From: Macrostomum lignano
Taxonomy: Eukaryota
Assembly: GCA_002269645.1 (NCBI GenBank)
Contig: NIVC01003432.1
Span: 1 to 64,000 of the forward strand
Direction of reading: 5' to 3'
DNA length: 64,000 nucleotides
The stretch's first letter is position 1; each line of letters starts with the position of its first letter. Of the stretch, positions 28,434 through 64,000 are shown piece by piece. Position numbers and translations under genes: made by a program. Below the pieces are notes generated by a model. That model was not told the DNA's origin. It did no database searches and saw only the letters and a program-made list of their open reading frames with translations.

Positions 28434-29170
<737 letters not shown>

Positions 29171-29181
29171 TCAAATCTCAC

Positions 29182-29896: not shown

Positions 29897-29934
29897 CTGG
29901 GCGGCGAAGATGGGATTGGTTGGTTAGGTTGCCT

Positions 29935-30547: not shown

Positions 30548-30585
30548 AATAGCTCACAGAGCGAACACAAAACCCATTTAACAAA

Positions 30586-31304: not shown

Positions 31305-31324
31305 CTGAGGTAGTAGGAGACAAG

Positions 31325-32905: not shown

Positions 32906-32942
32906 AATTACTGTACTTAGGTTTCATAGTTTACCTACTTAC

Positions 32943-33452: not shown

Positions 33453-33472
33453 CTACGGGTCGTTCGGGATAG

Positions 33473-36400
33473 AGCATCACTCACTCTAGCATCACTCACT
33501 CCAGCATCACTCACTCCAGCATCACTCACTCCAGCATCACTCACTCCAGCATCACTCACTCCAGCATCACTCACTCCAGCATCACTCACTACAGCATCAC
33601 TCACTCCAGAATCACTCACTTCAGCATCACTCACTCCAGCATCACTCACTTCAGCATCACTCACTTCAGCATCACTCACTCCAGCATCAGTCACTCCAGC
33701 ATCACTCACTACAGCATCACTCACTCCAGCATCAGTCACTCCAGCATCACTCACTTCAGCATCACTCACTCCAGCATCACTCACTTCAGCATCACTCACT
33801 CCAGCATCACTCACTCCAGCATCACTCACTCCAGCATCACTCACTCCAGCATCAGTCACTCCAGCATCACTCACTACAGCATCACTCACTCCAGCATCAC
33901 TCACTCCAGCATCACTCACTCCAGCATCACTCACTACAGCATCACTCACTCCAGCATCACTCACTCCAGCATCACTCACTCCAGCATCACTCACTACAGC
34001 ATCATTCACTCCAGCATCACTCACTCCAGCAACACTCACTACAGCATCACTCACTCCAGCATCACTCACTCCAGCATCACTCACTCCAGCATCACTCACT
34101 CCAGCATCACTCACTCCAGCATCACTCACTCCAGCATCACTCACTCCAGCATCACTCACTACAGCATCACTCACTACAGCATCACTCACTACAGCAACAC
34201 TCACTACAGCATCACTAACTCCAGCATCACTCACTCCAGCATCACTCACTCCAGCATCACTCACTCCAGCATCACTCACTCCAGCATCACTCACTCCAGC
34301 ATCACTCACTCCAGCATCACTCACTCCAGCATCACTCACTCCAGCATCACTCACTCCAGCATCACTCACTCCAGCATCACTCACTCCAGCATCACTCACT
34401 ACAGCATCATTCACTCCAGCATCACTCACTCCAGCATCACTCACTCCAGCATCACTCACTCCAGCATCACTCACTCCAGCATCACTCACTCCAGCATCAC
34501 TCACTCCAGCATCACTCACTCCAGCATCACTCACTCCAGCATCACTCACTCCAGCATCACTCACTCCAGCATCACTCACTCCAGCATCACTCACTCCAGC
34601 ATCACTCACTCCAGCATCACTCACTCCAGCATCACTCACTCCAGCATCACTCACTCCAGCATCACTCACTCCAGCATCACTCACTCCAGCATCACTCACT
34701 CCAGCATCACTCACTCCAGCATCACTCACTCCAGCATCACTCACTCCAGCATCACTCACTCCAGCATCACTCACTCCAGCATCACTCACTCCAGCATCAC
34801 TCACTCCAGCATCACTCACTCCAGCATCACTCACTCCAGCATCACTCACTCCAGCATCACTCACTCCAGCATCACTCACTCCAGCATCACTCACTCCAGC
34901 ATCACTCACTCCAGCATCACTCACTCCAGCATCACTCACTCCAGCATCACTCACTCCAGCATCACTCACTCAGCATCACTCACTCCAGCATCACTCACTC
35001 CAGCATCACTCACTACAGCATCACTCACTCCAGCATCACTCACTCCAGCATCACTCACTCCAGCATCACTCACTCCAGCATCACTCACTCCAGCATCACT
35101 CACTCCAGCATCACTCACTCCAGCATCACTCACTCCAGCATCACTCACTCCAGCATCACTCACTCCAGCATCACTCACTCCAGCATCACTCACTCCAGCA
35201 TCACTCACTCCAGCATCACTCACTCCAGCATCACTCACTCCAGCATCACTCACTCCAGCATCACTCACTCCAGCATCACTCACTCCAGCATCACTCACTT
35301 CCAGCATCACTCACTCCAGCATCACTCACTCCAGCATCACTCACTCCAGCATCACTCACTCCAGCATCACTCACTCCAGCATCACTCACTCCAGCATCAC
35401 TCACTCCAGCATCACTCACTCCAGCATCACTCACTCCAGCATCACTCACTCCAGCATCACTCACTCCAGCATCACTCACTCCAGCATCACTCACTCCAGC
35501 ATCACTCACTCCAGCATCACTCACTCCAGCATCACTCACTCCAGCATCACTCACTCCAGCATCACTCACTCCAGCATCACTCACTCCAGCATCACTCACT
35601 CCAGCATCACTCACTCCAGCATCACTCACTCCAGCATCACTCACTCCAGCATCACTCACTCCAGCATCACTCACTCCAGCATCACTCACTCCAGCATCAC
35701 TCACTACAGCATCACTCACTCCAGCATCACTCACTCCAGCATCACTCACTCCAGCATCACTCACTACAGCATCACTCACTCCAGCATCACTCACTCCAGC
35801 ATCACTCACTCCAGCATCACTCACTACAGCATCATTCACTCCAGCATCACTCACTCCAGCAACACTCACTACAGCATCACTACTCCAGCATCACTCACTC
35901 CAGCATCACTCACTCCAGCATCACTCACTCCAGCATCACTCACTCAGCATCACTCACTCCAGCATCACTCACTCCAGCATCACTCACTCCAGCATCACTC
36001 ACTCCAGCATCACTCACTCCAGCATCACTCACTCCAGCATCACTCACTACAGCATCACTCACTCCAGCATCACTCACTCCAGCATCACTCACTCCAGCAT
36101 CACTCACTCCAGCATCACTCACTACAGCATCACTCACTCCAGCATCACTCACTCCAGCATCACTCACTACAGCATCACTCACTACAGCATCATTCACTCC
36201 AGCATCACTCACTCCAGCAACACTCACTACAGCATCACTACTCCAGCATCACTCACTCCAGCATCACTCACTCCAGCATCACTCACTCCAGCATCACTCA
36301 CTCCAGCATCACTCACTCCAGCATCACTCACTCCAGCATCACTCACTACAGCATCACTCACTCCAGCATCACTCACTCCAGCATCACTCACTACAGCATC

Positions 36401-38738
36401 ACTCACTACAGCATCACTCACTCCAGCATCACTCACTCCAGCATCACTCACTCCAGCATCACTCACTCCAGCATCACTCACTCCAGCATCACTCACTCCA
36501 GCATCACTCACTCCAGCATCACTCACTCCAGCATCACTCACTACAGCATCATTCACTCCAGCATCACTCACTCCAGCATCACTCACTCCAGCATCACTCA
36601 CTCCAGCATCACTCACTCCAGCATCACTCACTCCAGCATCACTCACTCCAGCATCACTCACTCCAGCATCACTCACTCCAGCATCACTCACTCCAGCATC
36701 ACTCACTCCAGCATCACTCACTCCAGCATCACTCACTCCAGCATCACTCACTCCAGCATCACTCACTCCAGCATCACTCACTCCAGCATCACTCACTCCA
36801 GCATCACTCACTCCAGCATCACTCACTCCAGCATCACTCACTCCAGCATCACTCACTCCAGCATCACTCACTCCAGCATCACTCACTCCAGCATCACTCA
36901 CTCCAGCATCACTCACTCCAGCATCACTCACTCCAGCATCACTCACTCCAGCATCACTCACTCCAGCATCACTCACTCCAGCATCACTCACTCCAGCATC
37001 ACTCACTCCAGCATCACTCACTCCAGCATCACTCACTCCAGCATCACTCACTCCAGCATCACTCACTCCAGCATCACTCACTCCAGCATCACTCACTCCA
37101 GCATCACTCACTCCAGCATCACTCACTCCAGCATCACTCACTCCAGCATCACTCACTCCAGCATCACTCACTCCAGCATCACTCACTCCAGCATCACTCA
37201 CTCAGCATCACTCACTCCAGCATCACTCACTCCAGCATCACTCACTCCAGCATCACTCACTCCAGCATCACTCACTCCAGCATCACTCACTCCAGCATCA
37301 CTCACTCCAGCATCACTCACTCCAGCATCACTCACTCCAGCATCACTCACTCCAGCATCACTCACTCCAGCATCACTCACTCCAGCATCACTCACTCCAG
37401 CATCACTCACTCCAGCATCACTCACTCCAGCATCACTCACTCCAGCATCACTCACTCCAGCATCACTCACTCCAGCATCACTCACTCCAGCATCACTCAC
37501 TCCAGCATCACTCACTCAGCATCACTCACTCCAGCATCACTCACTCCAGCATCACTCACTCCAGCATCACTCACTCCAGCATCACTCACTCCAGCATCAC
37601 TCACTCCAGCATCACTCACTCCAGCATCACTCACTCCAGCATCACTCACTCCAGCATCACTCACTCCAGCATCACTCACTCCAGCATCACTCACTCCAGC
37701 ATCACTCACTCCAGCATCACTCACTCCAGCATCACTCACTCCAGCATCACTCACTCCAGCATCACTCACTCCAGCATCACTCACTCCAGCATCACTCACT
37801 CCAGCATCACTCACTCCAGCATCACTCACTCCAGCATCACTCACTACAGCATCATTCACTCCAGCATCACTCACTCCAGCAACACTCACTACAGCATCAC
37901 TAACTCCAGCATCACTCACTCCAGCATCACTCACTCCAGCATCACTCACTCCAGCATCACTCACTACAGCATCACTCACTCCAGCATCACTCACTCCAGC
38001 ATCACTCACTCCAGCATCACTCACTCCAGCATCACTCACTCCAGCATCACTCACTCCAGCATCACTCACTCCAGCATCACTCACTCCAGCATCACTCACT
38101 CCAGCATCACTCACTCCAGCATCACTCACTCCAGCATCACTCACTCCAGCATCACTCACTCCAGCATCACTCACTCCAGCATCACTCACTCCAGCATCAC
38201 TCACTACAGCATCACTCACTCCAGCATCACTCACTCCAGCATCACTCACTCCAGCATCACTCACTCCAGCATCACTCACTCCAGCATCACTCACTTCAGC
38301 ATCACTCACTCCAGCATCACTCACTCCAGCATCACTCACTCCAGCATCACTCACTCCAGCATCACTCACTCCAGCATCACTCACTCCAGCATCACTCACT
38401 ACAGCATCACTCACTCCAGCATCACTCACTCCAGCATCACTCACTCCAGCATCAGTCACTCCAGCATCACTCACTCCAGCATCACTCACTCCAGCATCAC
38501 TCACTCCAGCATCACTCACTCCAGCATCACTCACTCCAGCATCACTCACTCCAGCATCACTCACTCCAGCATCACTCACTCCAGCATCACTCACTCCAGC
38601 ATCACTCACTCCAGCATCACTCACTCCAGCATCACTCACTCCAGCATCACTCACTCCAGCATCACTCACTCCAGCATCACTCACTCCAGCATCACTCACT
38701 CCAGCATCACTCACTCCAGCATCACTCACTCCAGCAAC
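33473..38738. repeat. 5.3-kb 15-bp minisatellite (CCAGCATCACTCACT)n, about 350 copies
   Basis: Directly visible, very homogeneous. Confidence 0.98.
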
Positions 38739-39164
38739 ATTCAAATAGTTAAATAAATCAAACTTTCTGCATTTTCATAATTTTCTATCTTTATTGCAGC
38801 AATTAGCGATACCGATATTTGTCCGGAACAAAGCAAAAAAAATCTTTCTGCTTCAGCAAATCGGCTTAGCGAACCGTGATCTCCCGAGCCTTGGGAGCTA
38901 ATGCTAAAATCTATAATCTTCCCAACACTGGGAGTCAGGTAATCCTATCACGTTTAACTGGATCTTTTCGACATCTGTGGCTAAAAAAGTTTTACAATTC
39001 AACTCCCAATGCTTTGCTGTGAAAAATCTGATTTTTTACGCATTAAAAATTTCTTGGATTGTCAAAGGATATGGTTGATCTTATGGGATTTAACAGCATT
39101 GGATTTTCGCTTCGTTTAGTGTCAGCTGTGGATAAAATTGTTTACAGAACTTCCGACTTATGAG

Positions 39165-40875
39165 TGCCTCAGTATCCTTGAATCTGCCTCAGTATCCTTG
39201 AATCTGCCTCAGTATCCTTGAATCTGCCTCAGTATCCTTGAATCTGCCTCAGTATCCTTGAATCTGCCTTAGTATCCTTGAATCTGCCTTAGTATCCTTG
39301 AATCTGCCTCAGTATCCTTGAATCTGCCTCAGTATCCTTGAATCTGCCTTAGTATCCTTGAATCTGCCTTAGTATCCTTGAATCTGCCTTAGTATCCTTG
39401 AATCTGCCTCAGTATCCTTGAATCTGCCTCAGTATCCTTGAATCTGCCTCAGTATCCTTGAATCTGCCTCAGTATCCTTGAATCTGACTCAGTGTCCTTG
39501 AATATGCCTCTCTGATCCTTAAATCTGCCTCTCTGATCCTTGAATCTGCCTCTCTGATCCTCGAATCTGCCTCTCTGATCCTTAAATCTGCCTCTCTGAT
39601 CCTTGAATCTGCCTCTCTGATCTCTGAATCTGCCTCTCTGATCCTTAAATCTGCCTCTCTGATCCTTGAATCTGCCTCTCTGATCCTCGAATCTGCCTCT
39701 CTCTGATCCTTGAATCTGCCACAGTATCCTTGAATCTGCCTCAGTGTCCTTGAATCTGCCTCTCTGATCCTTGAATCTGCCACAGTATCCTTGAATCTGC
39801 CTCAGTGTCCTTGAATCTGCCTCAGTATCCTTGAATCTGCCTCAGTATCCTTGAATCTGCCTCAGTATCCTTGAATCTGACTCAGTGTCCTTGAATATGC
39901 CTCTCTGATCCTTAAATCTGCCTCTCTGATCCTTGAATCTGCCTCTCTGATCCTCGAATCTGCCTCTCTGATCCTTAAATCTGCCTCTCTGATCCTTGAA
40001 TCTGCCTCTCTGATCTCTGAATCTGCCTCTCTGATCCTTAAATCTGCCTCTCTGATCCTTGAATCTGCCTCTCTGATCCTCGAATCTGCCTCTCTCTGAT
40101 CCTTGAATCTGCCACAGTATCCTTGAATCTGCCTCAGTGTCCTTGAATCTGCCTCTCTGATCCTTGAATCTGCCACAGTATCCTTGAATCTGCCTCAGTG
40201 TCCTTGAATCTGCCTCAGTGTCCTTGAATCTGCCTCAGTATCCTTGAATCTGCCTCAGTATATTTGAATCTGCCTCAGTGTCCTTGAATCTGCCTCAGTA
40301 TCCTTGAATCTGCCTCAGTATCCTTGAATCTGCCTCAGTATCCTTGAATCTGCCTCATTATTCTTGAATCTGCCTCAGTATCCTTGAATCTGCCTCAGTA
40401 TCCTTGAATCTGGCTCAGTATCCTTGAATCTGGCCCAGTGTCCTTGAATCTGGCTCAGTATATTTGAATCTGCCTCAGTATCCTTGAATCTGCCTCAGTA
40501 TCCTTGAATCTGCCTCAGTGTCCTTGAATCTGCCTCAGTATCCTTGAATCTGGCTCAGTATCCTTGAATCTGACTCAGTATCCTTGAATCTGCTTCAGTG
40601 TCCTTGAATCTGCCTCACTGATCCTTGAATCTGCCCCACTGATCCTTGAATCTGCCCCACTGATCCTTGAATCTGCCCCACCGATCCTTGAATCTGCCTC
40701 ACTGATCCTTGAATCTGCCTGTGTCTTTAAATCTGCTTCAGTGGCCTTGAATCTGGCTCAGTCTCCTTGAATCTGGCTCAGTATCCTTGAATCTGCCTCA
40801 GTGTCCTTGAATCTGGCTCAGTATCCTTGAATCTGCCTCAGTATCCTTGAATCTGCCTCTGATAATTAAATCTGC
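39165..40875 (-). repeat. 20/21-bp family array (TCAGTATCCTTGAATCTGCC)n, reverse complement of the 20.7-23.4 kb arrays; includes a 393-bp internal duplication
   Basis: Same unit on the opposite strand. Identical track ORFs 39469..39783 and 39862..40176 are offset by 393. Confidence 0.95.
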
Positions 40876-40920
40876 CGAATATTTTGTCTACTTCAGTTCC
40901 CAAAGAAATTAACTCCTCAC

Positions 40921-41192
40921 CTTAACGCTGATCGTCATGCTGGCAGTCCTGGGATCGGGCTGGTGACCATCGACAGCCCGAACCTCCAGACTGAAGACCT
41001 GTTGCCTCTCTGCATCCAAACTGCTGGCCAGCCGGATCTCTCCGCTGACTGAATCGATTCTGAACGGCTGCTGCAGGGGTCGCCAACTGAGCGAAGACTG
41101 TAACGCAGTCTGCTCAGCTGGCCTTCCTGCTCGTCTGGGTCCGTGGCTCGAACCCTGTACACCACTGAGTTCACGGTGGCGTTTTCCGGGAT
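40921..41192 (-). CDS. Protocadherin-like gene exon 2: EC3, with a 1-nt frameshift
   Basis: Acceptor ccacag|ATC at 41193/41192 and donor AAG|gtgagg at 40921/40920. IPENATVN..ATDPDEQEG..LRYSL reads in one frame and QQPFRIDSVSGEIRLASSLDAERQQVFSLEVRAVDG..TASMTISVK in another. Length is 272 nt, one short of 273. Confidence 0.88.
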
Positions 41193-41244
41193 CTGTGGCC
41201 GGATTGGGATATGAGAGACGCTATTAGGGTGGGAAATTTTCAAC

Positions 41245-41980
41245 TACACCCTCCTCACTTGCACTCTCCTCACCTGCACCTCGAAGTCGGCACCCTCCTC
41301 ACCTGCACCCTTCTAACCTGAACCCTCCTCACCTGCACCCTCCTCACCTGCACCCTCCTCACCTGCACCCTCCTCACCTGCACCCTCCTCACCTGCACCC
41401 TCCTCACCTGCACTCTCCTCACCTGCACCCTTCTCACCTGCACCCTCCTCACCTGCACCCTCCTCACCTGCACCCTCCACACCTGAACCCTCCTCACCTG
41501 CACCCTCCTCACCTGCACTCTCCTCACCTGCACCCTCCTCACCTGCACCCTCCTCACCTGCACCCTCCACACCTGAACCCTCCTCACCTGCACCCTCCTC
41601 ACCTGCACTCTCCTCACCTGCACCCTCCTCACCTGCACCCTCCTCACCTGCACCCTCCTCACCTGAACCCTCCTCACCTGAACCCTCCTCACCTGCACCC
41701 TCCTCACCTGCACCCTTCTCACCTGCACCCTCCTCACCTGCACCCCGAAGTCGGCACCCTCCTCACCTGCACCCTTCTCACCTGCACCCTCCACACCTGA
41801 ACCCTCCTCACCTGCACCCTCCTCACCTGCACCCTCCTCACCTGCACCCTCCTCACCTGCACCCTCCTCACCTGCACCCTCCTCACCTGAACCCTCCTCA
41901 CCTGAACCCTCCTCACCTGCACCCTCCTCACCTGCACCCTTCTCACCTGCACCCTCCTCACCTGCACCCCGAAGTCGGCA
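41245..41980. repeat. 15-bp minisatellite (CTCCTCACCTGCACC)n with three CGAAGTCGGCAC interruptions
   Basis: Directly visible. Confidence 0.95.
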
Positions 41981-42559
41981 CGCACACAAATATTGTTATA
42001 AATACATATAAAGACATATAAACTTTATAAAAGAGCAATTAAACTTTTTTAAATGCGATTTAATTAACAAAAAAATTGCTCTCAGTTGGACACCTAGAGC
42101 CGGATGCAAAATAGCAGAACTAACAATTTGATGTTAAAAGTTTTCTTCTATTTTCTCTTGACATTGACTACGAGTGGAGCAGCTTCAACACTCCATTCGG
42201 GTGTGAGAAGCATTAGGCTCAGCTCTTTTCTCTTATGCCCTTATCTTCCTCCGGCTGACTCTCGCGAAAAAGGTCATTCAAAACGACACTCGACCGTAAC
42301 TTGACACTTGGCCCTAAAACTGACGCGCGCATCGTGCCAAAAAACTTATTTTATTATTTCGTCACCTCATCTGTATGGAGCAAGTGTTTAGCCTTGGCTA
42401 CAGGTGATTTTCCTATCTAACAGGGTGAGTTTAATGGTTATAAGAAGTCTAAGTGCGTCTGAGTTCTCCCACACTTCCTTTCTGCAGCTAATTGTTGCTG
42501 TCGGAACTGAATCTCTGATTTTCATTGGTGATAACTGTCTCTGCAAACCAATCTCTCCG

Positions 42560-43140
42560 ACTCTCCATCTCCCTCTCTCCCTCTTCCTCTCCTTATATCC
42601 ATGTCTCCCCATCTCCCCGTCTTCCTCTCCCTGTCTACCTATCTCCCTGTCTCCCTCTCCCTGTCTGTCTGTCTGTCTCCCTGTCTCCCTGTATCTTCTC
42701 TTCCTCTCTCCCTCTCTCCCTCTCTCCCTCTCTCCCTCTCTCCCTCTCTCCCTCTCTCCCTCTCTCCCTCTCTCCCTCTCTCCCTCTCTCCTCTCTCCCT
42801 CTCTCCCTCTCTCCCTGTCTCTCTGTCTCCCTCTCTCCCTCTCTCCCTCTCTCCCTCTCTCCCTGTCTCTCTGTCTCCCTCTCTCCCTGTCTCCCTGTCT
42901 CCCTCTCTCCCTCTCCCTCTCTTCCTCTCTCCCTCTCTCCCTCTCTCCCTGTCTCCCTGTCTCCCTGTCTCCCTCTCCCTGTCTGCCTGTCTCCCTGTCT
43001 CTCTGTCTCTTCTCTTCCTGTCTCCCTCTCTCCTTCTCTCCCTCTCTCCCTCTCTCCCTCTCCCTGTCTCCCTGTCTCCCTGTCTTCCTCTCACCCCTCT
43101 CCCTCTATCCCTCTTTCTCTGTCTGCCACTCTCCTTCTCC
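42560..43140. repeat. (CTCTCTCC/CTGTCTCC)n 8-bp array
   Basis: Directly visible. Confidence 0.9.
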
Positions 43141-43161
43141 CCCTCCAGCCCAGCCTCTCAC

Positions 43162-43989
43162 CGACAGCGGAACCAGCCGCCTCCCATTCTCAAACTGTGG
43201 CTCAAAATCGTTGGTGTTCTCCACTGCCAGTCGCACTGTGAGATTCGAATGCAGCCTCCTCGGCTCGCCCTCATCGCTGGCCTGGACCGTCAGCTCAATG
43301 ATCCTGACTCCGCGCTCTTCGCCCTCCAGATCGATGTCGCCGACCACCCTCAGCTCCGGCGTGCCTTCGTCTCCATTGACCAGCGAGAACTTTGAGTACG
43401 GGCTGGAGTACCGCAGGCCGTCAGGGAAACTGTAAGTCACGGAGCCGTTCCGCCCCGCATCCGGGTCCGTGGCTCTGGGCAGCAGGACCCTGGCCTGCCT
43501 GTCGTGCTCCCGAATCAAAGAATGAAACACGCCGCGACTGCTCAAGGTTAAAAACTCTGGCGGATTATCGTTGATATCCTCGATTAGCACCTGCACGTTG
43601 ATCAGCCGCATCCCGGCGGCGTCTTTTGGATTCGGCTGGAACATCGCCGTCACCTCAACTTGACAAACTCGATTAGGATTGGTTCGACAGCCTCTGATTG
43701 ATTCTCTGTCGATTGGCTGGTTGACAACCAGCAGGCCGGTGCTGCGGTGCAGCTCGAACAGGTTCGCTGCCGGGTCACTTGACTGCTGCTCGATCAGCTG
43801 GTAGAGTCCAGTTGAAGATGCCGGAGGTGGTGACTGGACTCTCAGGTTGCAGACTAGGCTGCCCTTCGGCTGCTCCTCAACCACCGAACAGCGAGCCTGC
43901 TCGCTTGAGCATCTTATTGAATGAGGCCGGAGAAGCAGTAGAAGCAGCAATAGCGGAAACTGGTAGAGATGAGGCAAGAAAACTGACAT
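43162..43989 (-). CDS. Protocadherin-like gene exon 1: signal peptide, EC1, EC2
   Basis: ATG at 43989 followed by a Leu-rich signal peptide. Cadherin motifs VEEQP, DRE, DINDNPP, ATDPDAGRNG and NTNDFEP. Donor TCG|gtgaga at 43162/43161, phase 0. Confidence 0.93.
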
Positions 43990-44121
43990 TTGACTTCTGT
44001 GTGAAACAGTCTCTGATTGAGTCTCACAGTACTTATGGCTGGCCTTAGAACAACTGCAATATGGATTAAAGGGGATGAGGATATTAGCTTGATACTTGCT
44101 GCAATCCAGAGTTTAACTTTA

Positions 44122-46259
44122 TCCCATCCCACACTCTATCCCACACTCTATCATCCCACACTATCATCTCACACTCTATCATCTCACACTCTATCCCACA
44201 CTGTATCTTACACTCATCCCACACTCTATCATCCCACACTCTATCATCCCACACTCTATCCCACACTCTATCATCCCACACTCTATCATCTCACACTCTA
44301 TCATCTCACACTCTATCCCACACTGTATCTTACACTCATCCCACACTCTATCATCCCACACTCTATCATCCCACACTCTATCCCACACTCTATCATCCCA
44401 CACTCTATCATCCCACACTCTATCCCACACTCGATCATCCCACACTCTATCCCACACTCTATCATCCCACACTCTATCATCTCACACTCTATCCCACACT
44501 GTATCTTACACTCATCCCACACTCTATCCCACACTATATCCCACACTCTATCATCCCACACTCTATCATCCCACACTCTATCCCACACTCTATCATCCCA
44601 CACTCTATCCCACACTCTATCATCCCACACTCTATCCCACACTCTATCATCCCACACTCTATCATCCCACACTCTATCATCCCACACTCTATCCCACACT
44701 CGATCATCCCACACTCTATCCCACACTCTATCATCCCACACTCTATCATCTCACACTCTATCCCACACTGTATCTTACACTCATCCCACACTCTATCCCA
44801 CACTATATCCCACACTCTATCATCCCACACTCTATCATCCCACACTCTATCCCACACTCTATCATCCCACACTCTATCCCACACTCTATCATCCCACACT
44901 CTATCATCTCACACTCTATCCCACACTGTATCTTACACTCATCTCACACTCTATCCCACACTATATCCCACACTCTATCATCCCACACTCTATCCCACAC
45001 TCTATCATCCCACACTCTATCCCACACTCTATCATCCCACACTCTATCCCACACTCTATCCCACACTCTATCATCCCACATTCTATCATCCCACACTCTA
45101 TCATCCCACACTCTATCATCCCACACTCTATCCCACACTCTATCATCCCACACTCTATCATCTCACACTCTATCATCCCACACTCTATCATCCCACACTC
45201 TATCATCCCACACTCTATCCCACACTCTATCATCCCACACTCTATCATCTCACACTCTATCCCACACTGTATCTTACACTCATCCCACACTCTATCCCAC
45301 ACTATATCCCACACTCTATCATCCCACACTCTATCCCACACTCTATCATCCCACACTCTATCATCCCACACTCTATCATCCCACACTCTATCATCCCACA
45401 CTCTATCATCCCACATTCTATCATCCCACACTCTATCATCCCACACTCTATCCCACACTCTATCATCCCACACTCTATCATCCCACACTCTATCATCCCA
45501 CACTCTATCCCACACTCTATCATCCCACACTCTATCATCCCACACTCTATCATCCCACACTCTATCCCACACTCTATCATCCCACACTCTATCATCTCAC
45601 ACTCTATCCCACACTGTATCTTACACTCTATCATCCCACACTCTATCCCACACTCTATCATCCCACACTCTATCATCCCACACTCTATCATCCCACACTC
45701 TATCATCCCACATTCTATCATCCCACACTCTATCCCACACTCTATCCCACACTCTATCCCACACTCTATCATCCCACACTCTATCCCACACTCTATCATC
45801 CCACACTCTATCCCACACTCTATCCCACACTCTATCATCCCACATTCTATCATCCCACACTCTATCATCCCACACTCTATCATCCCACACTCTATCCCAC
45901 ACTCTATCATCCCACACTCTATCATCTCACACTCTATCCCACACTGTATCATCCCACACTCTATCATCCCACACTCTATCATCCCACACTCTATCATCCC
46001 ACATTCTATCATCCCACACTCTATCATCCCACATTCTATCATCCCACACTCTATCATCCCCCACTCTATCCCACACTCTATCCCACACTCTATCCCACAC
46101 TCTATCATCCCACACTCTATCCCACACTCTATCATCCCACACTCTATCCCACACTCTATCATCCCACACTCTATCCCACACTCTATCATCCCACATTCTA
46201 TCATCCCACACTCTATCATCCCACACTCTATCATCCCACATTCTATCATCCCACACTCT
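44122..46259. repeat. 12/15-bp minisatellite (CCCACACTCTAT[CAT])n upstream of the protocadherin ATG
   Basis: Directly visible. Confidence 0.96.
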
Positions 46260-46607
46260 AAGCGGACTTTAACTTAAATTAATATGAATTAATGTGACAT
46301 TTCAACGGACGCTATCTGACAGCTTTTATCTGGCACAACCGCTCAAGTCTCTATCTAAGAAGCAAAAAATATTTTCAACTCAACATCTCTGCTTATGAAT
46401 CGCCAGCCCTGCAAAAAATGGAGAAAAATTGTACAAAAAAACCTGCCACCTCTTTTTTATTGACCTGTCGAATTTGATGTGGGCGCTCACGCGAGCGGCC
46501 TCTGCCCTTCATTGGGACGATTAAAAATGAGTAAAGCCTACAATGTGCAATTAGTGAATGAAATTCTCAAGGAAGACTGAAAACTCTCCCTCTAGCCAGC
46601 CAGAGAT

Positions 46608-51325: not shown

Positions 51326-52502
51326 TCTACCATCTTATACTTAAGCTTGACCAATTTCTATCATTTAGACCGAGGCAGGACTACCTGACTTCAGACCTCT
51401 CAAATGTGAAAAAAGCAAAGAATGCAAAAAATGAAATTACTTACTGGAACCGTTGCTATCATTTAGTAGTTAAGCCGACAAATTCTTTTATAAAGCCGAG
51501 CCTTCTCTGTAATGACAAGCTGCTTTTAAGTTTTTTTTCTCTACTTTTCTGCCAGCTGGAAAACCTGTGTGAGGTCCTTAACTCCAAACCCTCACCAGGC
51601 GCGTCAGCGCATGTTTCAACTAGTGGTCAACGCTGATTGGCTGGGCTACGAACCAGCCAATGAGAGTCGACTAACTGTGTTATACAGATTTCAATGAATG
51701 ATAAGCGATGCCTCCAGTGTGTGGCCTGTCATGGAGTGTTCGATAAAAGTGTATGGACAAGAGCCGTTGATTGCTACTACAAAATACTGTTTGACCTAAA
51801 AAGCGAAATGCAACCAAAACTCTTGATTGTCTATGGTAAATCCATGGCGGATGGCGGGCACCCTGGCGCAACATACCTGCGCGCAAATACTGTACGCATT
51901 CACGCACTCACATACACGTTCACACAGTGTGTACATCGGTCCTGACTGTCTAATCGTCAGGCACGTACACTCCTGACTCTCGGTAGCTCTCTTGTGGTCG
52001 TGGCCAGAGAGTCAGACGCTTCCAAAGTTTCCTTTTCATATTAGGCAATTTTAGTACTCCCTGAACTACTATGCGACCTACAGCACAGCTTTGGTAGTAA
52101 CAGTGGCCAGTGCAATTAATAACTTTTGACTTCTATCTCTTCTGCAGAAGACAGCGAAGCAACATGCTGCGCCCCTGTCAGGGGCTTTGGTGGCCGACTT
52201 AAAATTTTTTTCAGTTCTGTTTCTATGTGTCGCCAAAAACTAAGTTTCTGCTTTCGCAAAACCGCGCGGTGACTTCTGGGGGGAGCCGGGGCACAGTGAG
52301 AGAGAAGAATGATTAGGGTGAGGATTTACTAAGCTTGCCTCCAGGCTGTTGGATGGCCCACCGGGGAGTGTGGAGACTGGGTAGGGTCGAGCCCCATAGA
52401 CAGACAGATGGCGGAATTCACATCGCTGCCCGTGACACGTCATAAATCAATCTAGGGGCGCTTGGTCGTGGCAAGCAGATGGGTACTGTTGAAAGATTCT
52501 CT

Positions 52503-53706
<1,204 letters not shown>

Positions 53707-54243
53707 CGATGGACGAATGAACAGCAGGAGCCACTGACCCTCTTAAAGTGAGTTTTTACTGCTCCCTCATTCGAGTTTCTTATTTTACTGCTTCCACAAG
53801 AGCTGCTTCGAGTTTCTGGCTGGAACATCAGGGCAGGCAAGTCAGTCCGCTAGTAAAAAATGATTCCGCAGACATTTTTGGCACAGATTTTTGTCCAGTT
53901 CGTCCCAACTCGCTTTTTTTTGCCTGGCTGGACGATGCAGAGAGGCGGGCGGGGGCAGCAAAGTGGGTGAAACTCGCCGCGCAGTTCGGCTTTTAGGGGG
54001 GGGTGGCAGAGATGCTTAGGGATGGCACACTGCACTGCAGCAATGGGATATTGACAATTAAGCCTGTGGCTTCGATTCTTTTCGCAATAATTTACGTCAG
54101 TAGCTTCCGCCGTTGCGGTATTGGCGCAATCTGCCGCTAGTGTGCATGTTTTTGCCATGTTTTCGTTAGTGGGAGTTGGAGATCAAAGTATGCGGTATCA
54201 TTTTGAAATTGTGTAAGCTTTTCCATTGGACTGTGCAGTGATA

Positions 54244-58410: not shown

Positions 58411-58662
58411 TCTTTCAGTCTACCCAATCGCAAAGAATGAATAAAAAGCTAAAACGCTTTTATTTCTACTTACAAGCTAGCTATTAGTAGCGCATTACGA
58501 GACATATTGCATAATTTAAATTTATAAAATCTGTAAACTTTAAATTTCATAGGTTCAGACAGCCGCTCAAAAATTGCATATAAAATCACCGACAAATCCG
58601 AAGGCAAGTCGCCTATCTCAAATAATCTCAGTCCAAAATCTCACCTTCTTTCTAACAAACAG

Positions 58663-59161
58663 TCGAAGCCTCATGCATTTCAGCGGCGCCCGAGGAGGCG
58701 GCTCCCGCTCTGTCAGCGATGTTGGCAGCGACAATCGCCAAGAAACTCCGTCGACATCCGCAATGTCTAAAATTCGACAACATCAGCAAATTCAATTTGG
58801 CGGCGGCGGCGGCGCGTCGCGCGACTCCAGCCTGGAGCGTCACGTGACCTTCTCGCCGGCCACACGCAGCCCCACGGCCGGGCACCGACGCCCGCCGCCA
58901 TCGCCGGTGCCACCGTCGATGAGTCGTCGATTTGGCGCCGATGACGGCAGCGACGATGACGAGGAAGGAGAAGAAGACGATTATAGAGCTGATGAAGCCG
59001 AGCGTCGGGAAGCTGGGCATCTTCATCCGGCCAGCTTGCTGCAGTTCCCCGGTAGCTCGCTGGTCATCCCGTGCCCGCTGCCGCAGTCCTGCCCGGCGAC
59101 GCCGCTGCGTCGTTCGCGCGAGTCGACGGCGGCATCGAAGCAGCCGAGATCAACGCCGGAG
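58663..59161 (+). CDS. Exon encoding a low-complexity/disordered region (Gly, Ser, Pro, acidic stretch, RHVTF motif); possible start ATG at 58673
   Basis: Acceptor ttctttctaacaaacag| at 58662/58663 and donor GAG|gtgaga at 59161/59162 (phase 0). GC-rich open frame. The true 5' end is unresolved. Confidence 0.78.
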
Positions 59162-59329
59162 GTGAGAGATTCGATTGCGGTGTGAGATCTCAGAGAGTGA
59201 GACTCTGAGAATAGATTCCAAAAATGGATGCTCACTTTAGTGAGACTTTGCAAATTCAATCTAAAAGTGAAAATCCTTGAATGAGGCTTTCAGCAGAGTA
59301 AGATTCCTAGGATTGAGACTTTCGTAGTG

Positions 59330-59858
59330 AGATTTTCATAGCGATTTTCTCAGGGTGAGATTTTAAGAGTGAGATTTTCATAGCGATTTTCTCAGGATGA
59401 GATTTTAAGAGTGAGATTTTCATAGCGATTTTCTCAGGGTGAGATTTTCAGAGTGAGATTCCGGCAGTGAGATTCCTCAACTGCCACTACCAGAGTGAGA
59501 TTGCCAGAGTGAGATTCCCAGAGTGAGATTTCCAGAATGAGATTCCCAGAGTGAGATTCCCAGAGTGAGATTCCCAGAGTGAGATTCCCAGAGTGAGATT
59601 CCCAGAGTGAGATTCCCAGAGTGAGATTCCCAGAGTGAGATTCCCAGAGTGAGAGATTCCCAGAGTGAGATTCCCAGAGTGAGATTCCCAGAGTGAGATT
59701 CCCAGAGTGAGATTCCCAGAGTGAGATTCCCAGAGTGAGATTCCCAGAGTGAGATTCCCAGAGTGAGATTCCCAGAGTGAGATTCCCAGAGTGAGATTCC
59801 CAGAGTGAGATTCCCAGAGTGAGATTCCCAGAGTGAGGTTCCTGGAGTGAGATTCCAG
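59330..59858 (+). repeat. 14-bp minisatellite (GAGTGAGATTCCCA)n, left arm of an inverted pair
   Basis: Directly visible; degenerate copies extend back toward the donor at 59162. Confidence 0.95.
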
Positions 59859-60354
59859 CCACCTTAAGAGACAGATTTCATCCGATGAGTTTCAGGGTAT
59901 AGGAATCTTTGACTTACAAAAGTCTTGACATTGCGTGTCACAGGTAATTAAATATTTTTCTACATTTTTAATAATTAATGCAAATATTGATTTCATCTGG
60001 CAATCCTCGTAACCCAATGACTTCCGTGGACAGAACCTTCCCATAGATTCCCATGGAGCTTCCCCAAGCTAATCTCCTCGTCTCCAGTGGGCACGTGGGC
60101 TTCGTTTTCTGATGTTTCATGAGATGGGGAAAACGCAAACTAATCTTCATCAGTCAGTCACGCTGAATTTGGGTGAGGCTGAATTGGGATTCTGTTGTTT
60201 TAAAAGGGGAGATTGGGAGCAAATGACAAATCCAAGCTTTCTGAGGTCTAATCTGAGGGACACGGAAACTCTGTACGGATTCGAAATCTCCCTCCTTAAA
60301 TTGAATTTTTTAGAATGTCAGTTCAGGAGTCTCAATCTAGCAATTTCAGCCGGA

Positions 60355-61082
60355 GAACCTCACTCTGGGAATCTCATCCTAGGAATCTCACCATGAAAAT
60401 CTCACTCTGGGAATCTCACTCTGGGAATCGAACTCTGGGAGTCTCACACGGTGAATATCTCTCTGGGAACCTCATTTTGGGAATCTCACTCTGGGAATCT
60501 CACTCTGGGATCTCACTCTGGAAATCTCACTCTGGAAATCTCACTCTGGAAATCTCACTCTGGAAATCTCACTCTGGAAATCTCACTCTGGGAATCTCAC
60601 TCTGGTAAGAGAATCCCAGTCTGGGAATCTCACTCTGGGAATCTCACTCTGGGAATCTCACTCTGGGAATCTCACTCTGGGAATCTCACTCTGGGAATCT
60701 CACTCTGGGAATCTCACTCTGGGAATCTCACTCTGGGAATCTCACTCTGGGAAAATCACTCTGGGAATCTCACTCTGGGAATCTCAGTCTGGGAATCTCA
60801 CTCTGGGATCTCACTCTGAAAATCTCACTCTGGAAATCTCACTCTGGAAATCTCACTCTGGAAATCTCACTCTGGGAATCTCACTCTGGAAATCTCACTC
60901 TGGAAATCTCACTCTGGGAATCTCACTCTGGGAATCTCATTCTGACAATCTCACTCTGGGAATCTCATTCTGGGATCTCAGTCTGTGAATCTCACTCTAT
61001 GAATCACAATTTGGGTATCTCACGACGGTAATCACACCCTGTGAATTTAACTCTGGAAAACTCACTCTGAGAATCTCACTCT
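60355..61082 (-). repeat. 14-bp minisatellite (TGGGAATCTCACTC)n, right arm of an inverted pair
   Basis: Exact reverse complement of the left-arm unit. Confidence 0.95.
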
Positions 61083-61469
61083 AAGTTTAAGTACATCAGC
61101 TAGCAAAGTTTCTCTCCGGCACTGGTGTACTAATTGTGCAAGTTTCAACAACATGCAATGGCCTCCGTTAAAATGGGAGCAGATGTGAGCCCCTGTGACA
61201 GCCGCAGTCTCCCTATCCATTGATGTTTTTGTGGGAAACACGACTAAAAACCTGGATGGACGGGGGCCGACTTCCCGTGTTGAAAAGAATTGTCGAAGTT
61301 TCTTTTTAATTAAAAAAAAATTCAGCGTATACCTTACCTGCATGAGGATTAGGGCTGAAGCAATAATGCCTACTTATAATACAGTTATTGTCAGGATGAG
61401 GGCATTGTTAACTCTCTGTAGTGCTCAGTCTCGGGGGTGAGAGGCATGCAATGGACACATGAAGGGTAT

Positions 61470-61755
61470 GAGAGTCACGGGAGAGTGGGGTGAGGGTTGC
61501 AGACATCAGAATCTCATATAAGAGTCACGGGTGAAGGCATCAAACTCTCATATGAGAGTCACGGGTAGAGGCATCAGAATCTCAAATGAGAGTCACGGGG
61601 AGAGGCATCAAAATCTCATATGAGAGTCACGGGGAGAGGCATCAAAATCTCATATGAGAGTCACGGTGGTGCAATCAAAATCTCATATGAGAGTCACGGG
61701 TAGAGGCATCAAACTCTCATGAGAGTCACGGGTAGAGGCATCAGAATCTCATACG
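61470..61755. repeat. 34-bp minisatellite (TGAGAGTCACGGGGAGAGGCATCAAAATCTCATA)n
   Basis: Unit starts at 61553, 61587 and 61621. Confidence 0.9.
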
Positions 61756-62184
61756 AGAGGCACCGAGAATCTTAGCAATAATTCGAAAAGAAAACAAGAA
61801 TACCTTTTTGTACTTTCAGGTTGCCAAATTATCCGTTGTCTTCGGGCACTTTGGCTCATTAAAGGCCGTCAATTGATAATTAATGCTCATTTTTCATCTC
61901 AGATTCCTCCTCTTCGATGAGGATGTTTCAGGATATTTTTAGATAAAAACTTCGCAAATTAAGTGAATTATGTAAAACTCATAAATCAACTGAATACGTG
62001 ATCTGGAATCCTGCTATTGAAATCAGATGGTTAGATTAGTGAAATTTTATACCATAAGTAGCGAAGAAAGAAATTGGATTATTTCATAATTGAGTGCGAC
62101 AAAACCATGAATAAATCGCTGAGGAGATAGGAGGGTGAGAGAGTAGGAAGAGAAGGAGGAAGGCTTGAAATGAAGGTGGGAAAA

Positions 62185-62718
62185 GAGAGAATGAGGGAGG
62201 GAGGGAGAGGGAGACACGGAGAGAAGGAGAGAGTGAGAGAGAGGGAGAGAGGGAGAGAGGGAGAGAGGGAGAGAGGGAGAGAGGGAGAGAGAGGGAGAGA
62301 GAGAGAGAGAGGAGGGCGCCTCCAATCTCGGGCACTGACACGGTAGAAAGTCAGAAAGGACTGAAAAAAGTCAATTTAAATTGAGTAGCCGATATTTCGA
62401 AATTAAATTTCTTCGTCAGAGCTGTAAGAGAAGGAGAGAGTGAGAGAGAGGGAGAGAGGGAGAGAGGGAGAGAGGGAGAGAGGGAGAGAGGGAGAGAGGG
62501 AGAGAGGGAGACACGGAGAGAGGAAGAGAGAGAGGGTGAGAAGGAAAGATGGAGAGAGGGAGAGAGGGAGAGAGGGAGAGAGGGAGAGAGAGAGGGTGAG
62601 AAGGAGAGAGGGAGAGAGGGAGAGAGAGGGAGGGAGGGAGGGAGGGAGAGAGGGAGATAGGTAGAAAGGGAGAGGGAGAGAGGGAGACGGGGAGACAGGG
62701 AGACAGGGAGAGATGGGA
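62185..62718. repeat. Two (GAGAGGGA)n 8-bp arrays (about 62185-62312 and 62430-62718)
   Basis: Directly visible. Confidence 0.9.
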
Positions 62719-62763
62719 GAACTCCTACAGCAATAGCTGTTCATCATTATCACCATTTCACAG

Positions 62764-63294
62764 CAGGATCAGCTGAAGAGGACCGTCAGCAGTTCGGCTG
62801 GGATCCCCAGACCGGGTGAAATTTTCCCGAGCATCGCGGCTCCGGCTCGACTGCCACAGGATGGGGCCGAGGTCGATCACCTGCTCCTGACTGACTGCTT
62901 CGATGCCCAGCATCCATTGCTGCTTTTTATCTTGCCGCCATCGAAGCGGACCCAGCGCGATCATCTAGCAAACTCGGTGTTGCAAACTTTCTCCAATCGA
63001 GTTGACGAATTTACCAACTGTCGCCTGATTGGTCGACTCTGTAGTCATGGTGACACCGAGGAACTCGGTGCGGTAGCTTTTCCAATACTGGTGGACCTGT
63101 CGGGTCGTGTTGATGGAGCCTGCGGACTCGGTGATAACTCGACTGTCTGTGGAATTTTCGCTCTGAGCTGCGTGGATTTTGGAGGCGACAAGCGGGCGAT
63201 TCTGCAGTGGTCAGCGCTGTTTGCCGCTGTTGATGGAGCTCTGAAACAGCCTGATGGATGGGTGGAGCTTGCGCTGAAGATGCTTTCTGGATGA
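62764..63294 (+). CDS. Terminal exon encoding a peroxiredoxin (AhpC/TSA)-like domain lacking the catalytic residues
   Basis: Acceptor catttcacag| at 62763/62764 (phase 0). Open frame to TGA at 63292-63294. Segments GEIFPSI, LLLFILP, FSNRVDEF, FPILVDLSGRV, CGIFAL and VELALKML are collinear with recalled 2-Cys Prx motifs (GKPAPDF, VVLFFYP, FSNRAEDF, IPLLADVTRRL, RGLFII, VDEALRLV). Confidence 0.75.
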   Translation, partial: QDQLKRTVSSSAGIPRPGEIFPSIAAPARLPQDGAEVDHLLLTDCFDAQHPLLLFILPPSKRTQRDHLANSVLQTFSNRVDEFTNCRLIGRLCSHGDTEELGAVAFPILVDLSGRVDGACGLGDNSTVCGIFALSCVDFGGDKRAILQWSALFAAVDGALKQPDGWVELALKMLSG

Positions 63295-63485: not shown

Positions 63486-63491
63486 AATAAA
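63486..63491 (+). promoter_or_regulatory. Candidate poly(A) signal AATAAA for the Prx-like gene (another at 63631-63636)
   Basis: Hexamer about 190 nt downstream of the stop. Confidence 0.35.
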
Positions 63492-64000
63492 TCGATAGTT
63501 AAACAGTTCGATTTCTTTTCCAGGGTGAACTGGGCTGCTCACACCAAGAAGAAACAAACCAAGGATTCACAGCTAGTGAAACCACTGCCTATACCGATCA
63601 GTCCCAGACAATACCTATTGTACGTACTTGAATAAACGTTAAATTATCGAAGAGAGCTTATGAATTACACAATACATTTTCCTAGATGTGTTAGTCATGC
63701 GAGTAACTGAAGTCATTCCATTTTCATAAATTTTTCAAGTAGTTAGTCGGATTTAGAAAATATCAAGTAAGCAAAATGTGCATCAGCTTTCTTACCGCGC
63801 ACTTTTATCGAATAATAGTCTATGTTTCATGCTAGAATTTCTCTCACGGATGGGCCGCATAGTGCCATAGACTAAAAAAATACACTTTAACAAACTTAGG
63901 TAAGGAACAGCTATAATAAGCTGTTTTTTAATTAGCGTTGACCCCTCCATGCATAAAGTTGACGATGACTTGTTTAATTTGGTTGGAGCGATTAAGGCGA

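What the first reader, a model, noticed from the sequence alone, without database searches (positions are those of the whole stretch)
58663..63294. Candidate pseudo-peroxiredoxin fused to a disordered region carrying a PP1-type RVxF motif
Seen: exon 58663-59161 (phase-0 donor) joins exon 62764-63294 (phase-0 acceptor), giving at least 339 aa if the ATG at 58673 is used. The second exon follows the order of AhpC/Prx1 motifs as I recall them from PRDX2: GEIFPSI~GKPAPDF, LLLFILP~VVLFFYP, QTFSNRVDEF~IAFSNRAEDF, FPILVDLSGRV~IPLLADVTRRL, CGIFAL~RGLFII, VELALKML~VDEALRLV. The peroxidatic PxxxTxxC loop is replaced by PPSKRTQRDHLANSVLQT (62935-62988, no Cys, about 4-residue insertion), the catalytic Arg position reads Cys, and the resolving-Cys tail is absent. 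The first exon has RHVTF (58838-58852), matching [RK]-x-V-x-F, plus an acidic tract DDGSDDDEEGEEDD. Knowledge: Prx catalysis needs that Cys and Arg, and RVxF motifs dock PP1. Inference: a catalytically dead Prx fold reused as a scaffold or PP1 regulator. I know of no described family with this architecture.
Basis: partly seen in the sequence, partly recalled or inferred. Interest (0 to 1): 0.78.

Follow-up and report, generated by a model that had tools for sequence, protein, structure and literature searches.

The report
Possible cysteine-less peroxiredoxin-like flatworm ORF
In a very repeat-rich stretch of a Macrostomum-type flatworm genome, one open reading frame shows a reproducible but borderline resemblance to peroxiredoxin enzymes and lacks their catalytic cysteines; nothing I could run shows that it is expressed, joined to the upstream exon, or linked to protein phosphatase 1.

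Summary
The only database relative is a chimeric UniProt model from Macrostomum lignano. It contains exon 1 (168/168 aa identical) but splices it to a different terminal exon at 61821-61877.

The exon 2 product has no hit in Pfam, NCBIfam, PDB sequences or 1.84 billion protein representatives. AlphaFold gives pLDDT 38-41, and Foldseek finds no thioredoxin or Prx fold.

- probability is 69-79% and P is 1.5-4.4e-5;
- none of 700 shuffles reaches the score;
- it is the lone outlier among 262 window ORFs (37.8 against 20.3 for the next best).

HMMER without filters is weaker (P about 3e-4). The aligned peroxidatic and resolving Cys positions hold no Cys.

ORF length and codon usage do not establish coding. 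The flatworm spliced leader ends in ATG and would be in frame at 62764, so a stand-alone 177-aa protein is a rival gene model.

RHVTF fits the RVxF consensus, but no other evidence points to PP1.

Verdict: probably (about 55%) a lineage-specific, cysteine-less Prx-derived domain. The fusion and PP1 ideas are untested. Interest is modest.

The parts
58663..59161 (+). Candidate exon 1. It is an open frame with ATG at 58673, AG acceptor at 58661-58662 and GTGAG donor at 59162. It encodes a 163-aa low-complexity, disorder-type sequence.
   Evidence: It is 168/168 aa identical to residues 788-955 of UniProt A0A1I8ILH9. There is no Pfam hit. Codon-usage LLR is -0.05 bits/codon, against 0.19-0.37 for proven exons. 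GC shows no 3-base periodicity. ORF openness has P about 0.07.
58838..58852 (+). RHVTF, a match to the RVxF-type PP1-docking consensus.
   Evidence: It fits both the loose and the strict consensus. At least one loose match occurs in 2.7-5% of exon 1 shuffles. No SILK or MyPhoNE companion motif was found.
58940..58981 (+). Acidic tract DDGSDDDEEGEEDD.
59162..62763 (+). Putative 3.6-kb intron, or outron if exon 2 is trans-spliced. It consists mostly of satellites: 14-mer arrays at 59347-59856 and 60355-61082 in inverted orientation, a 34-mer array at 61504-61763, and GA-rich repeats at 62185-62720.
61821..61877 (+). Alternative terminal mini-exon (VAKLSVVFGHFGSLKAVN*) behind a T-rich CAG acceptor. 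The public M. lignano model joins this exon to exon 1.
   Evidence: tblastn, 16/19 aa identical to the end of P0001.
62764..63294 (+). Candidate exon 2, 176 codons plus TGA. It is a peroxiredoxin-like (AhpC/TSA-type) ORF without catalytic cysteines.
   Evidence: hhalign gives probability 69-79% and P 1.5-4.4e-5. Shuffles and decoys score far lower. HMMER --max gives 6.6 bits, with 0/5000 shuffles reaching it. Negative results: Pfam, NCBIfam, PDB sequences and the large libraries; AF2 pLDDT 38-41; Foldseek. Codon LLR is 0.048.
62938..62988 (+). Remnant of the PxxxTxxC active-site loop. PSKRT keeps the Pro and Thr. QRDHLANS follows with a 3-4 residue insertion and no Cys.
   Evidence: Alignments; coordinates.
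62989..63012 (+). FSNRVDEF, aligned to the FS(N/D)R(A/V)E(D/E)F helix that follows the active site in typical 2-Cys peroxiredoxins.
63079..63111 (+). FPILVDLSGRV, aligned to the (I/F)P(L/I)L(A/S)D motif of the family.
63250..63261 (+). PDGW, aligned to the PAGW that follows the resolving Cys (VCPAGW) of typical 2-Cys peroxiredoxins. The Cys position is a gap.
   Evidence: This part of the alignment is low confidence.
63486..63491 (+). AATAAA, a possible polyadenylation signal 192 nt after the stop codon.

Best explanation
The window comes from a Macrostomum lignano-type flatworm genome. The ORF at 62764-63294 most likely encodes a lineage-specific, extremely diverged member of the peroxiredoxin (AhpC/TSA thioredoxin-fold) family, with exon boundaries that coincide with the domain boundaries.

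It keeps the family's hydrophobic core strands, the Pro and Thr of the active-site loop, the FSxRxxEF helix and the FPxLxD motif. It has lost both the peroxidatic and the resolving cysteine. It therefore cannot work as a thiol peroxidase. Any function would be non-catalytic, such as binding, scaffolding or a chaperone-like role (inferred).

The ORF has no usable ATG of its own, so it needs one of two arrangements:
- (a) cis-splicing to the 58663-59161 exon, which adds a 163-aa disordered N-terminus carrying RHVTF;
- (b) trans-splicing of the M. lignano spliced leader at 62764. The leader's terminal AUG is in frame there and would give a 177-aa stand-alone protein.

Shown: the sequence anatomy, the profile similarity and the absence of the Cys residues. 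Inferred: that the ORF is expressed, which 5' arrangement is used, and any function.
For: **Organism.** The only library hit is UniRef100_A0A1I8ILH9 from M. lignano, identical over exon 1.

**Prx similarity by hhalign.**
- Six-sequence profile: probability 70.5%, P 3.9e-5.
- 49-sequence profile: 69%.
- 43-sequence profile built only from database sequences: 79%, P 1.5e-5.
- The register is always the same, Prx residues about 3-120 against exon 2 residues 7-123.
- Four of five single-subfamily profiles align in that register too.

**Controls.**
- 500 global shuffles reach at most 23.0 and 200 block shuffles at most 23.2, against 36.5-38.3 for the real sequence.
- The reversed sequence scores 9.4.
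- Cadherin, C2, junk ORFs, E. coli thioredoxin and CheY all score 14.4 or less.
- Among all 262 window ORFs of at least 70 aa, this one scores 37.8 and the next best 20.3.

**HMMER --max.** With the verified profile the score is 6.6 bits, P about 3e-4, and 0/5000 shuffles reach it. It is the top of 1168 six-frame fragments.

**Other points.**
- MAFFT finds the same register unaided.
- The aligned Cys positions are non-Cys.
- The flatworm SL AUG can initiate translation (PMC12582326, citing Cheng et al. 2006).
- 30-39% of genes are trans-spliced.
Against: - Pfam and NCBIfam hmmscan give nothing at E<=10. PDB sequences give nothing relevant.
- No relative of exon 2 was found in 1.84 billion representatives, in the 5.8-billion library even at E<=10, or in metagenome contigs.
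- AlphaFold2 is unconfident both alone (pLDDT 38) and with a 25-sequence Prx1 alignment (pLDDT 41). Foldseek finds no thioredoxin or Prx fold.
- The HH signal depends on profile composition. Leave-one-out probabilities range from 3.5% to 81%, and single-subfamily profiles give only 0.3-6%.
- Corrected for a Pfam-sized library, P of 2e-5 corresponds to an E-value of about 0.4.
- MAFFT identity (23%) is only 2 sd above shuffles.
- Codon usage (0.048 bits/codon) lies between proven exons (0.19-0.37) and junk ORFs (-0.43 to -0.08).
- ORF length is not significant.
- The public M. lignano protein set contains exon 1 but not exon 2.
Confidence: 0.5

Rival explanations
1. Neither ORF is a gene. They are chance open frames in GC-richer unique islands between satellite arrays, and the peroxiredoxin resemblance is a sub-threshold false positive picked out by eye.
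For: - ORF openness is reached in 4-7% of composition-matched simulations.
- Antisense ORFs of 103-170 aa overlap exon 2, and one of 124 aa overlaps exon 1.
- Exon 1 has no codon-position GC periodicity and a negative codon score.
- There is no Pfam or NCBIfam hit and no homologue anywhere.
- AF2 fails twice.
- The HMMER E-value is 0.37 even within the window.
- The family-wise corrected HH E-value is about 0.4.
Against: - The HH score is about 10 sd above 700 shuffles and above the other 261 window ORFs.
- The alignment spans the whole domain in order, and its ends coincide with the splice acceptor and the stop codon.
- Exon 2 shows coding-like GC1>GC3>GC2 and the best codon score of the unannotated ORFs, apart from a likely cadherin tail exon.
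- Exon 1 is 168/168 aa identical to the second M. lignano copy, while neighbouring segments differ at 4-16% of residues.
Confidence: 0.3
2. Exon 1 and exon 2 are cis-spliced into a 339-aa protein, in which a dead Prx fold serves as a scaffold and the disordered N-terminus docks PP1 through RHVTF.
For: - Donor and acceptor are consensus and both phase 0.
- RHVTF satisfies even the strict RVxF consensus. It lies in a disorder-type segment with 68% disorder-promoting residues and sits near an acidic tract.
- A strict match arises in only 0.55% of exon 1 shuffles.
Against: - There is no junction evidence.
- The public model uses the 61821 acceptor.
- An in-frame SL-AUG start at 62764 makes exon 1 unnecessary.
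- The putative intron is 3.6 kb, against a genome mean of 1.1-1.4 kb.
- No SILK or MyPhoNE motif is present.
- RVxF was one of hundreds of short motifs that could have been noticed after the fact.
- Conservation is uninformative, because the only relative is identical throughout.
- Exon 1's coding status is itself weak.
Confidence: 0.07
3. Exon 2 is a non-functional relic: a decaying duplicate or retro-copy of a canonical 2-Cys peroxiredoxin gene that happens still to be open.
For: - Both catalytic cysteines are lost, and there are internal deletions relative to Prx1 of about 11 aa and about 13 aa.
- Codon bias is weak.
- No orthologues were found.
- AF2 cannot fold it.
Against: Divergence to about 23% identity without a single stop or frameshift in 185 codons is unlikely for a neutrally decaying sequence. 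No further Prx-like fragments appear in other frames or elsewhere in the window. The ORF is also bounded by a good acceptor and followed by AATAAA.
Confidence: 0.1

Closest known systems
Typical 2-Cys peroxiredoxins (AhpC-Prx1 subfamily; human PRDX1/PRDX2, bacterial AhpC)
   Same: The order of core elements is the same: an N-terminal G-x-x-a-P-x-F hairpin, the hydrophobic strand ending in Pro, the Thr of the active-site loop, the FS(N/D)Rx(E/D)(E/D)F helix, (F/I)PxLxD, a beta-hairpin, and a C-terminal P-x-G-W.
   Different: - There is no peroxidatic Cys and no resolving Cys.
- The active-site loop carries a 3-4 residue insertion.
- About 11 and about 13 residues are deleted.
- The position aligned to the conserved Arg reads Cys, in a low-confidence part of the alignment.
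- Identity is only about 23%.
- It is undetectable by Pfam or HMMER with default filters.
- The Prx1-only profile gives only 24% probability.
BCP/PrxQ, Prx5, Prx6 and Tpx peroxiredoxin subfamilies
   Same: Its size of about 160-180 aa is that of a compact Prx core. Profiles of BCP-, Prx5- and Prx6-type sequences align in the same register.
   Different: Each subfamily alone gives only weak scores (P 0.01-0.19). The signal comes from the family consensus, so no subfamily assignment is possible.
RVxF-type PP1-interacting proteins (e.g. NIPP1 with RVTF; recalled from memory)
   Same: A [RK]-x-V-x-F motif lies in a disordered, partly acidic segment.
   Different: There are no auxiliary docking motifs, no homology to any known PP1 regulator and no binding evidence. 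Whether the motif-bearing exon belongs to the same protein as the Prx-like domain is unknown.
UniProt A0A1I8ILH9 (M. lignano 'RNase H domain-containing protein', 972 aa)
   Same: It contains exon 1 with the same acceptor (58663) and donor (59161), and is 168/168 aa identical.
   Different: It is an evidently chimeric prediction. It strings together retroelement RT/RNase H, the antisense of a cadherin exon, exon 1 and the 61821 mini-exon. It does not contain the Prx-like ORF.

Membership tests
Peroxiredoxin (AhpC/TSA, Pfam PF00578/PF08534) | Significant sequence-profile match to the family domain | tested here: inconclusive
   Pfam and NCBIfam hmmscan give no hit at E<=10. hhalign gives probability 69-79% and P 1.5-4.4e-5. 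HMMER --max gives 6.6 bits, P about 3e-4. Corrected for a Pfam-sized library, the E-value is about 0.4.
Peroxiredoxin (AhpC/TSA, Pfam PF00578/PF08534) | PxxxTxxC motif with the peroxidatic cysteine | tested here: not met
   Pro59 and Thr63 are retained (PSKRT). The aligned Cys position is Ala or Asp, and there is no Cys between residues 46 and 85.
Peroxiredoxin (AhpC/TSA, Pfam PF00578/PF08534) | Conserved active-site arginine (Arg127 of PRDX2) | tested here: inconclusive
   MAFFT puts Cys129 opposite the Arg. hhalign confidence in this segment is low.
Typical 2-Cys (AhpC-Prx1) subfamily | Resolving cysteine in the C-terminal VCP motif | tested here: not met
   ALKQ-PDGW is aligned to GEVCPAGW with a gap at the Cys.
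Peroxiredoxin (AhpC/TSA, Pfam PF00578/PF08534) | Thioredoxin-fold three-dimensional structure | tested here: inconclusive
   AF2 gives pLDDT 38 (single sequence) and 41 (with a Prx1 alignment). Foldseek against PDB finds no thioredoxin or Prx hit, best E about 0.8-2. Models of this confidence cannot decide.
Peroxiredoxin (AhpC/TSA, Pfam PF00578/PF08534) | Thiol-dependent peroxidase activity | not testable with these tools
   This needs recombinant protein and an assay. Absence of activity is expected from the missing Cys.
RVxF-type PP1-interacting proteins | RVxF consensus in an accessible or disordered region | tested here: met
   RHVTF at residues 56-60 fits both the loose and the strict patterns. 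The segment is 68% disorder-promoting residues.
RVxF-type PP1-interacting proteins | Auxiliary PP1-docking motifs (SILK, MyPhoNE) | tested here: not met
   A regex scan found none.
RVxF-type PP1-interacting proteins | Physical binding to PP1 that depends on the motif | not testable with these tools
   This needs a pull-down with wild type against an RHATA mutant.
   GAG|GTGAG donor, CAG| acceptor, both phase 0.
   No flatworm transcript data are reachable. Exact-protein look-ups found nothing. The public model uses 61821 instead.
   Exon 1 scores -0.05 and exon 2 0.048 bits/codon. Cadherin and C2 exons score 0.19-0.37, and junk ORFs -0.43 to -0.08.

The most novel reading that the evidence does not exclude
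A Macrostomum-specific protein in which a peroxiredoxin fold stripped of both catalytic cysteines is fused to a disordered arm whose RHVTF motif recruits PP1. This would be a previously undescribed pseudo-peroxiredoxin phosphatase-regulator architecture.
Probability: 0.05. Interest if true: 0.6.

Novelty: new variant of a known kind. Interest (0 to 1): 0.3.

Why it matters
If the ORF is real, it would be an example of an antioxidant enzyme fold turned into a non-catalytic protein in a regenerating flatworm model. It is so diverged that standard annotation (Pfam, AlphaFold, homology search) misses it. It would also be a small case study of how lineage-specific 'orphan' genes can be extreme derivatives of old families. 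As it stands, the locus mainly shows how easily long ORFs arise in this satellite-rich genome, and that a public model of the locus is chimeric. The finding does not open a long-standing question.

Tried and rejected
**Searches and look-ups that found nothing**
- Pfam and NCBIfam scans of the spliced protein and of exon 2: no hits.
- phmmer against PDB sequences: only a chance cyanovirin match, E 1.4.
- Word-indexed library search of the whole protein, and of exon 2 at E<=10: nothing.
- Exhaustive search of 1.84 billion representatives: only the M. lignano chimera, covering exon 1.
- Exact-protein contig look-ups for P0001 and three window ORFs: nothing.
- Metagenome scan with exon 2: none.
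- Self-BLAST: both exons are unique in the window.
- A search for further Prx-like fragments in other frames, to test for a frameshifted pseudogene: none.
- Literature searches for cysteine-less peroxiredoxin pseudoenzymes or for Macrostomum peroxiredoxins: nothing relevant.

**Tests that were not significant or not informative**
- BLASTP against PRDX2, and single-sequence hhalign or blastp against six Prx: not significant.
- AF2 on the single sequence and with a Prx1 alignment: low confidence. Foldseek on both models: uninformative.
- MAFFT identity as a statistic: rejected, because shuffles reach 19.5% against 23% for the real sequence.

**Attempts to widen the Prx profile**
- The genome-contig scan rejected the alignment query.
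- Diversity was obtained instead from plasmid-borne peroxiredoxins.
- One hhalign leave-group-out run crashed, so the 'without Prx5/Tpx/Prx6/Prx1' profiles were not obtained.

Full report
**What is in the sequence.** The window is eukaryotic and dominated by tandem repeats.

- 58673-59161 is an open frame of 163 codons. It begins with ATG, follows an AG at 58661-58662 and ends GAG|GTGAGA.
- 62764-63294 is an open frame of 176 codons plus TGA, after ...tttcacag|.
- Both junctions are phase 0 and give 339 aa.
- RHVTF (58838-58852), the acidic tract (58940-58981) and the Cys-free loop PPSKRTQRDHLANSVLQT (62935-62988) are all present.
- The 3.6 kb between the two ORFs is almost entirely satellite DNA.

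**Organism and the only known relative.** An exhaustive HMMER search of 1.84 billion representative proteins with the 339-aa product returned one hit, P0001. This is UniRef100_A0A1I8ILH9 of Macrostomum lignano.

That 972-aa prediction is a chimera of four pieces:
- retroelement RT/RNase H;
- the antisense of a cadherin exon (window 43151-43510);
- an 18-aa terminal exon corresponding to window 61821-61877.

So the window is from M. lignano or a very close relative, and the one public model containing exon 1 does not join it to the Prx-like ORF. Exon 1 is identical between the two copies, whereas the other two shared segments differ at 4% and 16% of residues. This is a weak hint of constraint on exon 1. 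It is not conclusive, because the two copies may simply be differently assembled duplicates.

**Is either ORF demonstrably coding?** Not by intrinsic measures.
- Composition-matched simulations give a fully open frame in 7% (exon 1 region) and 4% (exon 2 region) of trials.
- A codon-usage log-likelihood was trained on the Pfam-supported cadherin and C2 exons of the same window. Those exons score 0.19-0.37 bits/codon in leave-one-out tests. Exon 2 scores 0.048, exon 1 scores -0.05, and evident junk ORFs score -0.43 to -0.08.
- Exon 2 has coding-like GC1>GC3>GC2. Exon 1 has no periodicity.
- Both ORFs are unique in the window.

**Is exon 2 peroxiredoxin-like? Standard tools say no.**
- Pfam and NCBIfam give no hit at E<=10.
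- PDB sequences give nothing relevant.
- The 5.8-billion library gives nothing even at E<=10, and metagenomes give nothing.
- BLASTP against PRDX2 gives E 1.3.
- AlphaFold2 gives pLDDT 38 without an alignment and 41 with 25 Prx1 sequences. Foldseek against PDB finds no thioredoxin or Prx fold for either model.

**Profile-profile comparison says probably yes.**
BCP and Tpx were later verified as 100% identical to database sequences, and PRDX2 as 92-94% identical to mammalian PRDX2.
- To remove dependence on memory I collected 28 diverse plasmid-borne peroxiredoxins, three BCPs and twelve Prx1 proteins.

**Controls on the hhalign result.**
- 500 global shuffles have mean 12.8, sd 2.3 and maximum 23.0. 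The reversed sequence scores 9.4.
- 200 block shuffles that keep local composition reach at most 23.2.
- Window cadherin and C2 exons, junk ORFs, E. coli thioredoxin and CheY all score 14.4 or less.
- Among all 262 six-frame ORFs of at least 70 aa in the window, this ORF is the lone outlier: 37.8 against 20.3 for the next best, with a mean of 9.5.

**HMMER and MAFFT.** HMMER with filters off gives 6.6 bits (P about 3e-4; 0/5000 shuffles) with the verified profile, and weaker results with narrower profiles. Within the window this is the top of 1168 fragments, but at E 0.37. MAFFT alone reproduces the register and adds ALKQ-PDGW opposite GEVCPAGW. However, raw identity (23%) is only 2 sd above shuffles.

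**Weaknesses of the Prx signal.**
- It is profile-dependent. Leave-one-out probabilities run from 3.5% to 81%, and single-subfamily profiles give 0.3-6%, although four of five are in the same register.
- After correction for a Pfam-sized family library, the E-value would be about 0.4.

I put the chance that this is a true Prx-family derivative at about 55-60%.

**Catalytic residues.** In every alignment the Pro and Thr of PxxxTxxC are kept (PSKRT). The peroxidatic Cys position is Ala or Asp after a 3-4 residue insertion. The resolving-Cys position is a gap, and the conserved Arg is opposite Cys129 in a low-confidence segment. If the protein exists, it is not a thiol peroxidase.

**Gene model.** The donor GTGAG and acceptor CAG match the M. 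lignano consensus (PMC8629364).
- the 61821 acceptor used in the public model;
- SL trans-splicing.

On trans-splicing, the facts are these. 30-39% of M. lignano genes receive a 35-nt leader ending in ATG. The flatworm SL AUG can serve as initiator (citing Cheng et al. 2006). Joined at 62764, that ATG is in frame (ATG|CAG GAT...). The result would be a 177-aa protein whose ends coincide with the Prx-like domain. The sequence before 62764 (TCACAG) fits the reported trans-acceptor motif [T/C]TNCAG at five of six positions. None of the three models can be tested without transcript data.

**PP1 idea.**
- RHVTF fits the loose and strict RVxF patterns and sits in a disorder-type segment.
- A loose match arises in 3-5% of exon 1 shuffles and 13-21% of whole-protein shuffles. 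A strict match arises in 0.55% and 1.9%.
- There is no SILK or MyPhoNE motif, no homology to known PP1 regulators and no informative conservation.
- The motif was chosen after reading the sequence, from among many possible short motifs, so it is a lead and not evidence.

**Verdict.** The Prx resemblance is real but borderline, and the loss of the catalytic cysteines is clear. The exon join, the expression and the PP1 role are unsupported.
- Best reading (0.5): a lineage-specific, cysteine-less, highly diverged peroxiredoxin-derived ORF with an unresolved 5' end.
- Main rival (0.3): chance ORFs with a false-positive similarity.

Novelty, if real, is a new variant of a known kind. Interest is modest (0.3).

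Noticed in passing
window 25225-43989, minus strand (ORFs 43105-43989, 32931-33452, 30807-31304, 29171-29836; possibly 25225-25683): A multi-exon cadherin gene. Pfam Cadherin gives E 1e-24 to 7e-5, and Cadherin_2 matches at the 5' exon. Its introns are filled with minisatellites. The 25225-25683 ORF has no Pfam hit but has coding-like codon usage (0.085 bits/codon), so it may be the cytoplasmic tail exon.
   Followed up: partly
window 12071-12643, plus strand: An exon encoding a C2 domain (Pfam PF00168, E 7e-24). It probably belongs to a synaptotagmin- or rabphilin-like gene and is flanked by long tandem repeats.
   Followed up: partly
window 59347-59856 and 60355-61082: Two arrays of the same 14-nt satellite (TTCCCAGAGTGAGA) in opposite orientation flank about 500 bp of unique sequence inside the putative intron. 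This is a large inverted-repeat structure that could form a hairpin in pre-mRNA or DNA.
   Followed up: no
UniProt A0A1I8ILH9 (P0001) against window 43151-43510, 58663-59161 and 61821-61877: The public M. lignano protein model covering this locus is a chimera. It joins a retroelement RT/RNase H, the antisense strand of a cadherin exon, exon 1 and a mini-exon. In the window the antisense-cadherin frame carries a stop where P0001 has Tyr.
   Followed up: partly
window 63524-63621, plus strand: A 98-nt segment bounded by ...ttttccag| and |gtacgt is open in two frames (e.g. VNWAAHTKKKQTKDSQLVKPLPIPISPRQYLL). It could be an exon of a downstream gene or a 3'-UTR exon. A good donor (AAAAAG|GTACAA) also lies at 63317, just after the exon 2 stop.
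   Followed up: no
whole window, e.g. 8869-12165 (-), 44017-46272 (+), 33347-38744 (-), 52418-53734 (-): Tandem repeats generate very long spurious ORFs of up to 1098 aa in several frames and on both strands. ORF length is therefore a poor guide to genes in this genome. This is consistent with the report that simple and tandem repeats make up 15% of the M. lignano assembly (PMC5730564).
   Followed up: partly
window 62185-62720: About 500 bp of GA-rich (GAGGGAGA)n microsatellite ends only about 40 nt before the exon 2 acceptor. In the exon 2 frame it would read as Arg/Glu/Gly repeats, but it is separated from the ORF by stop codons.
   Followed up: no
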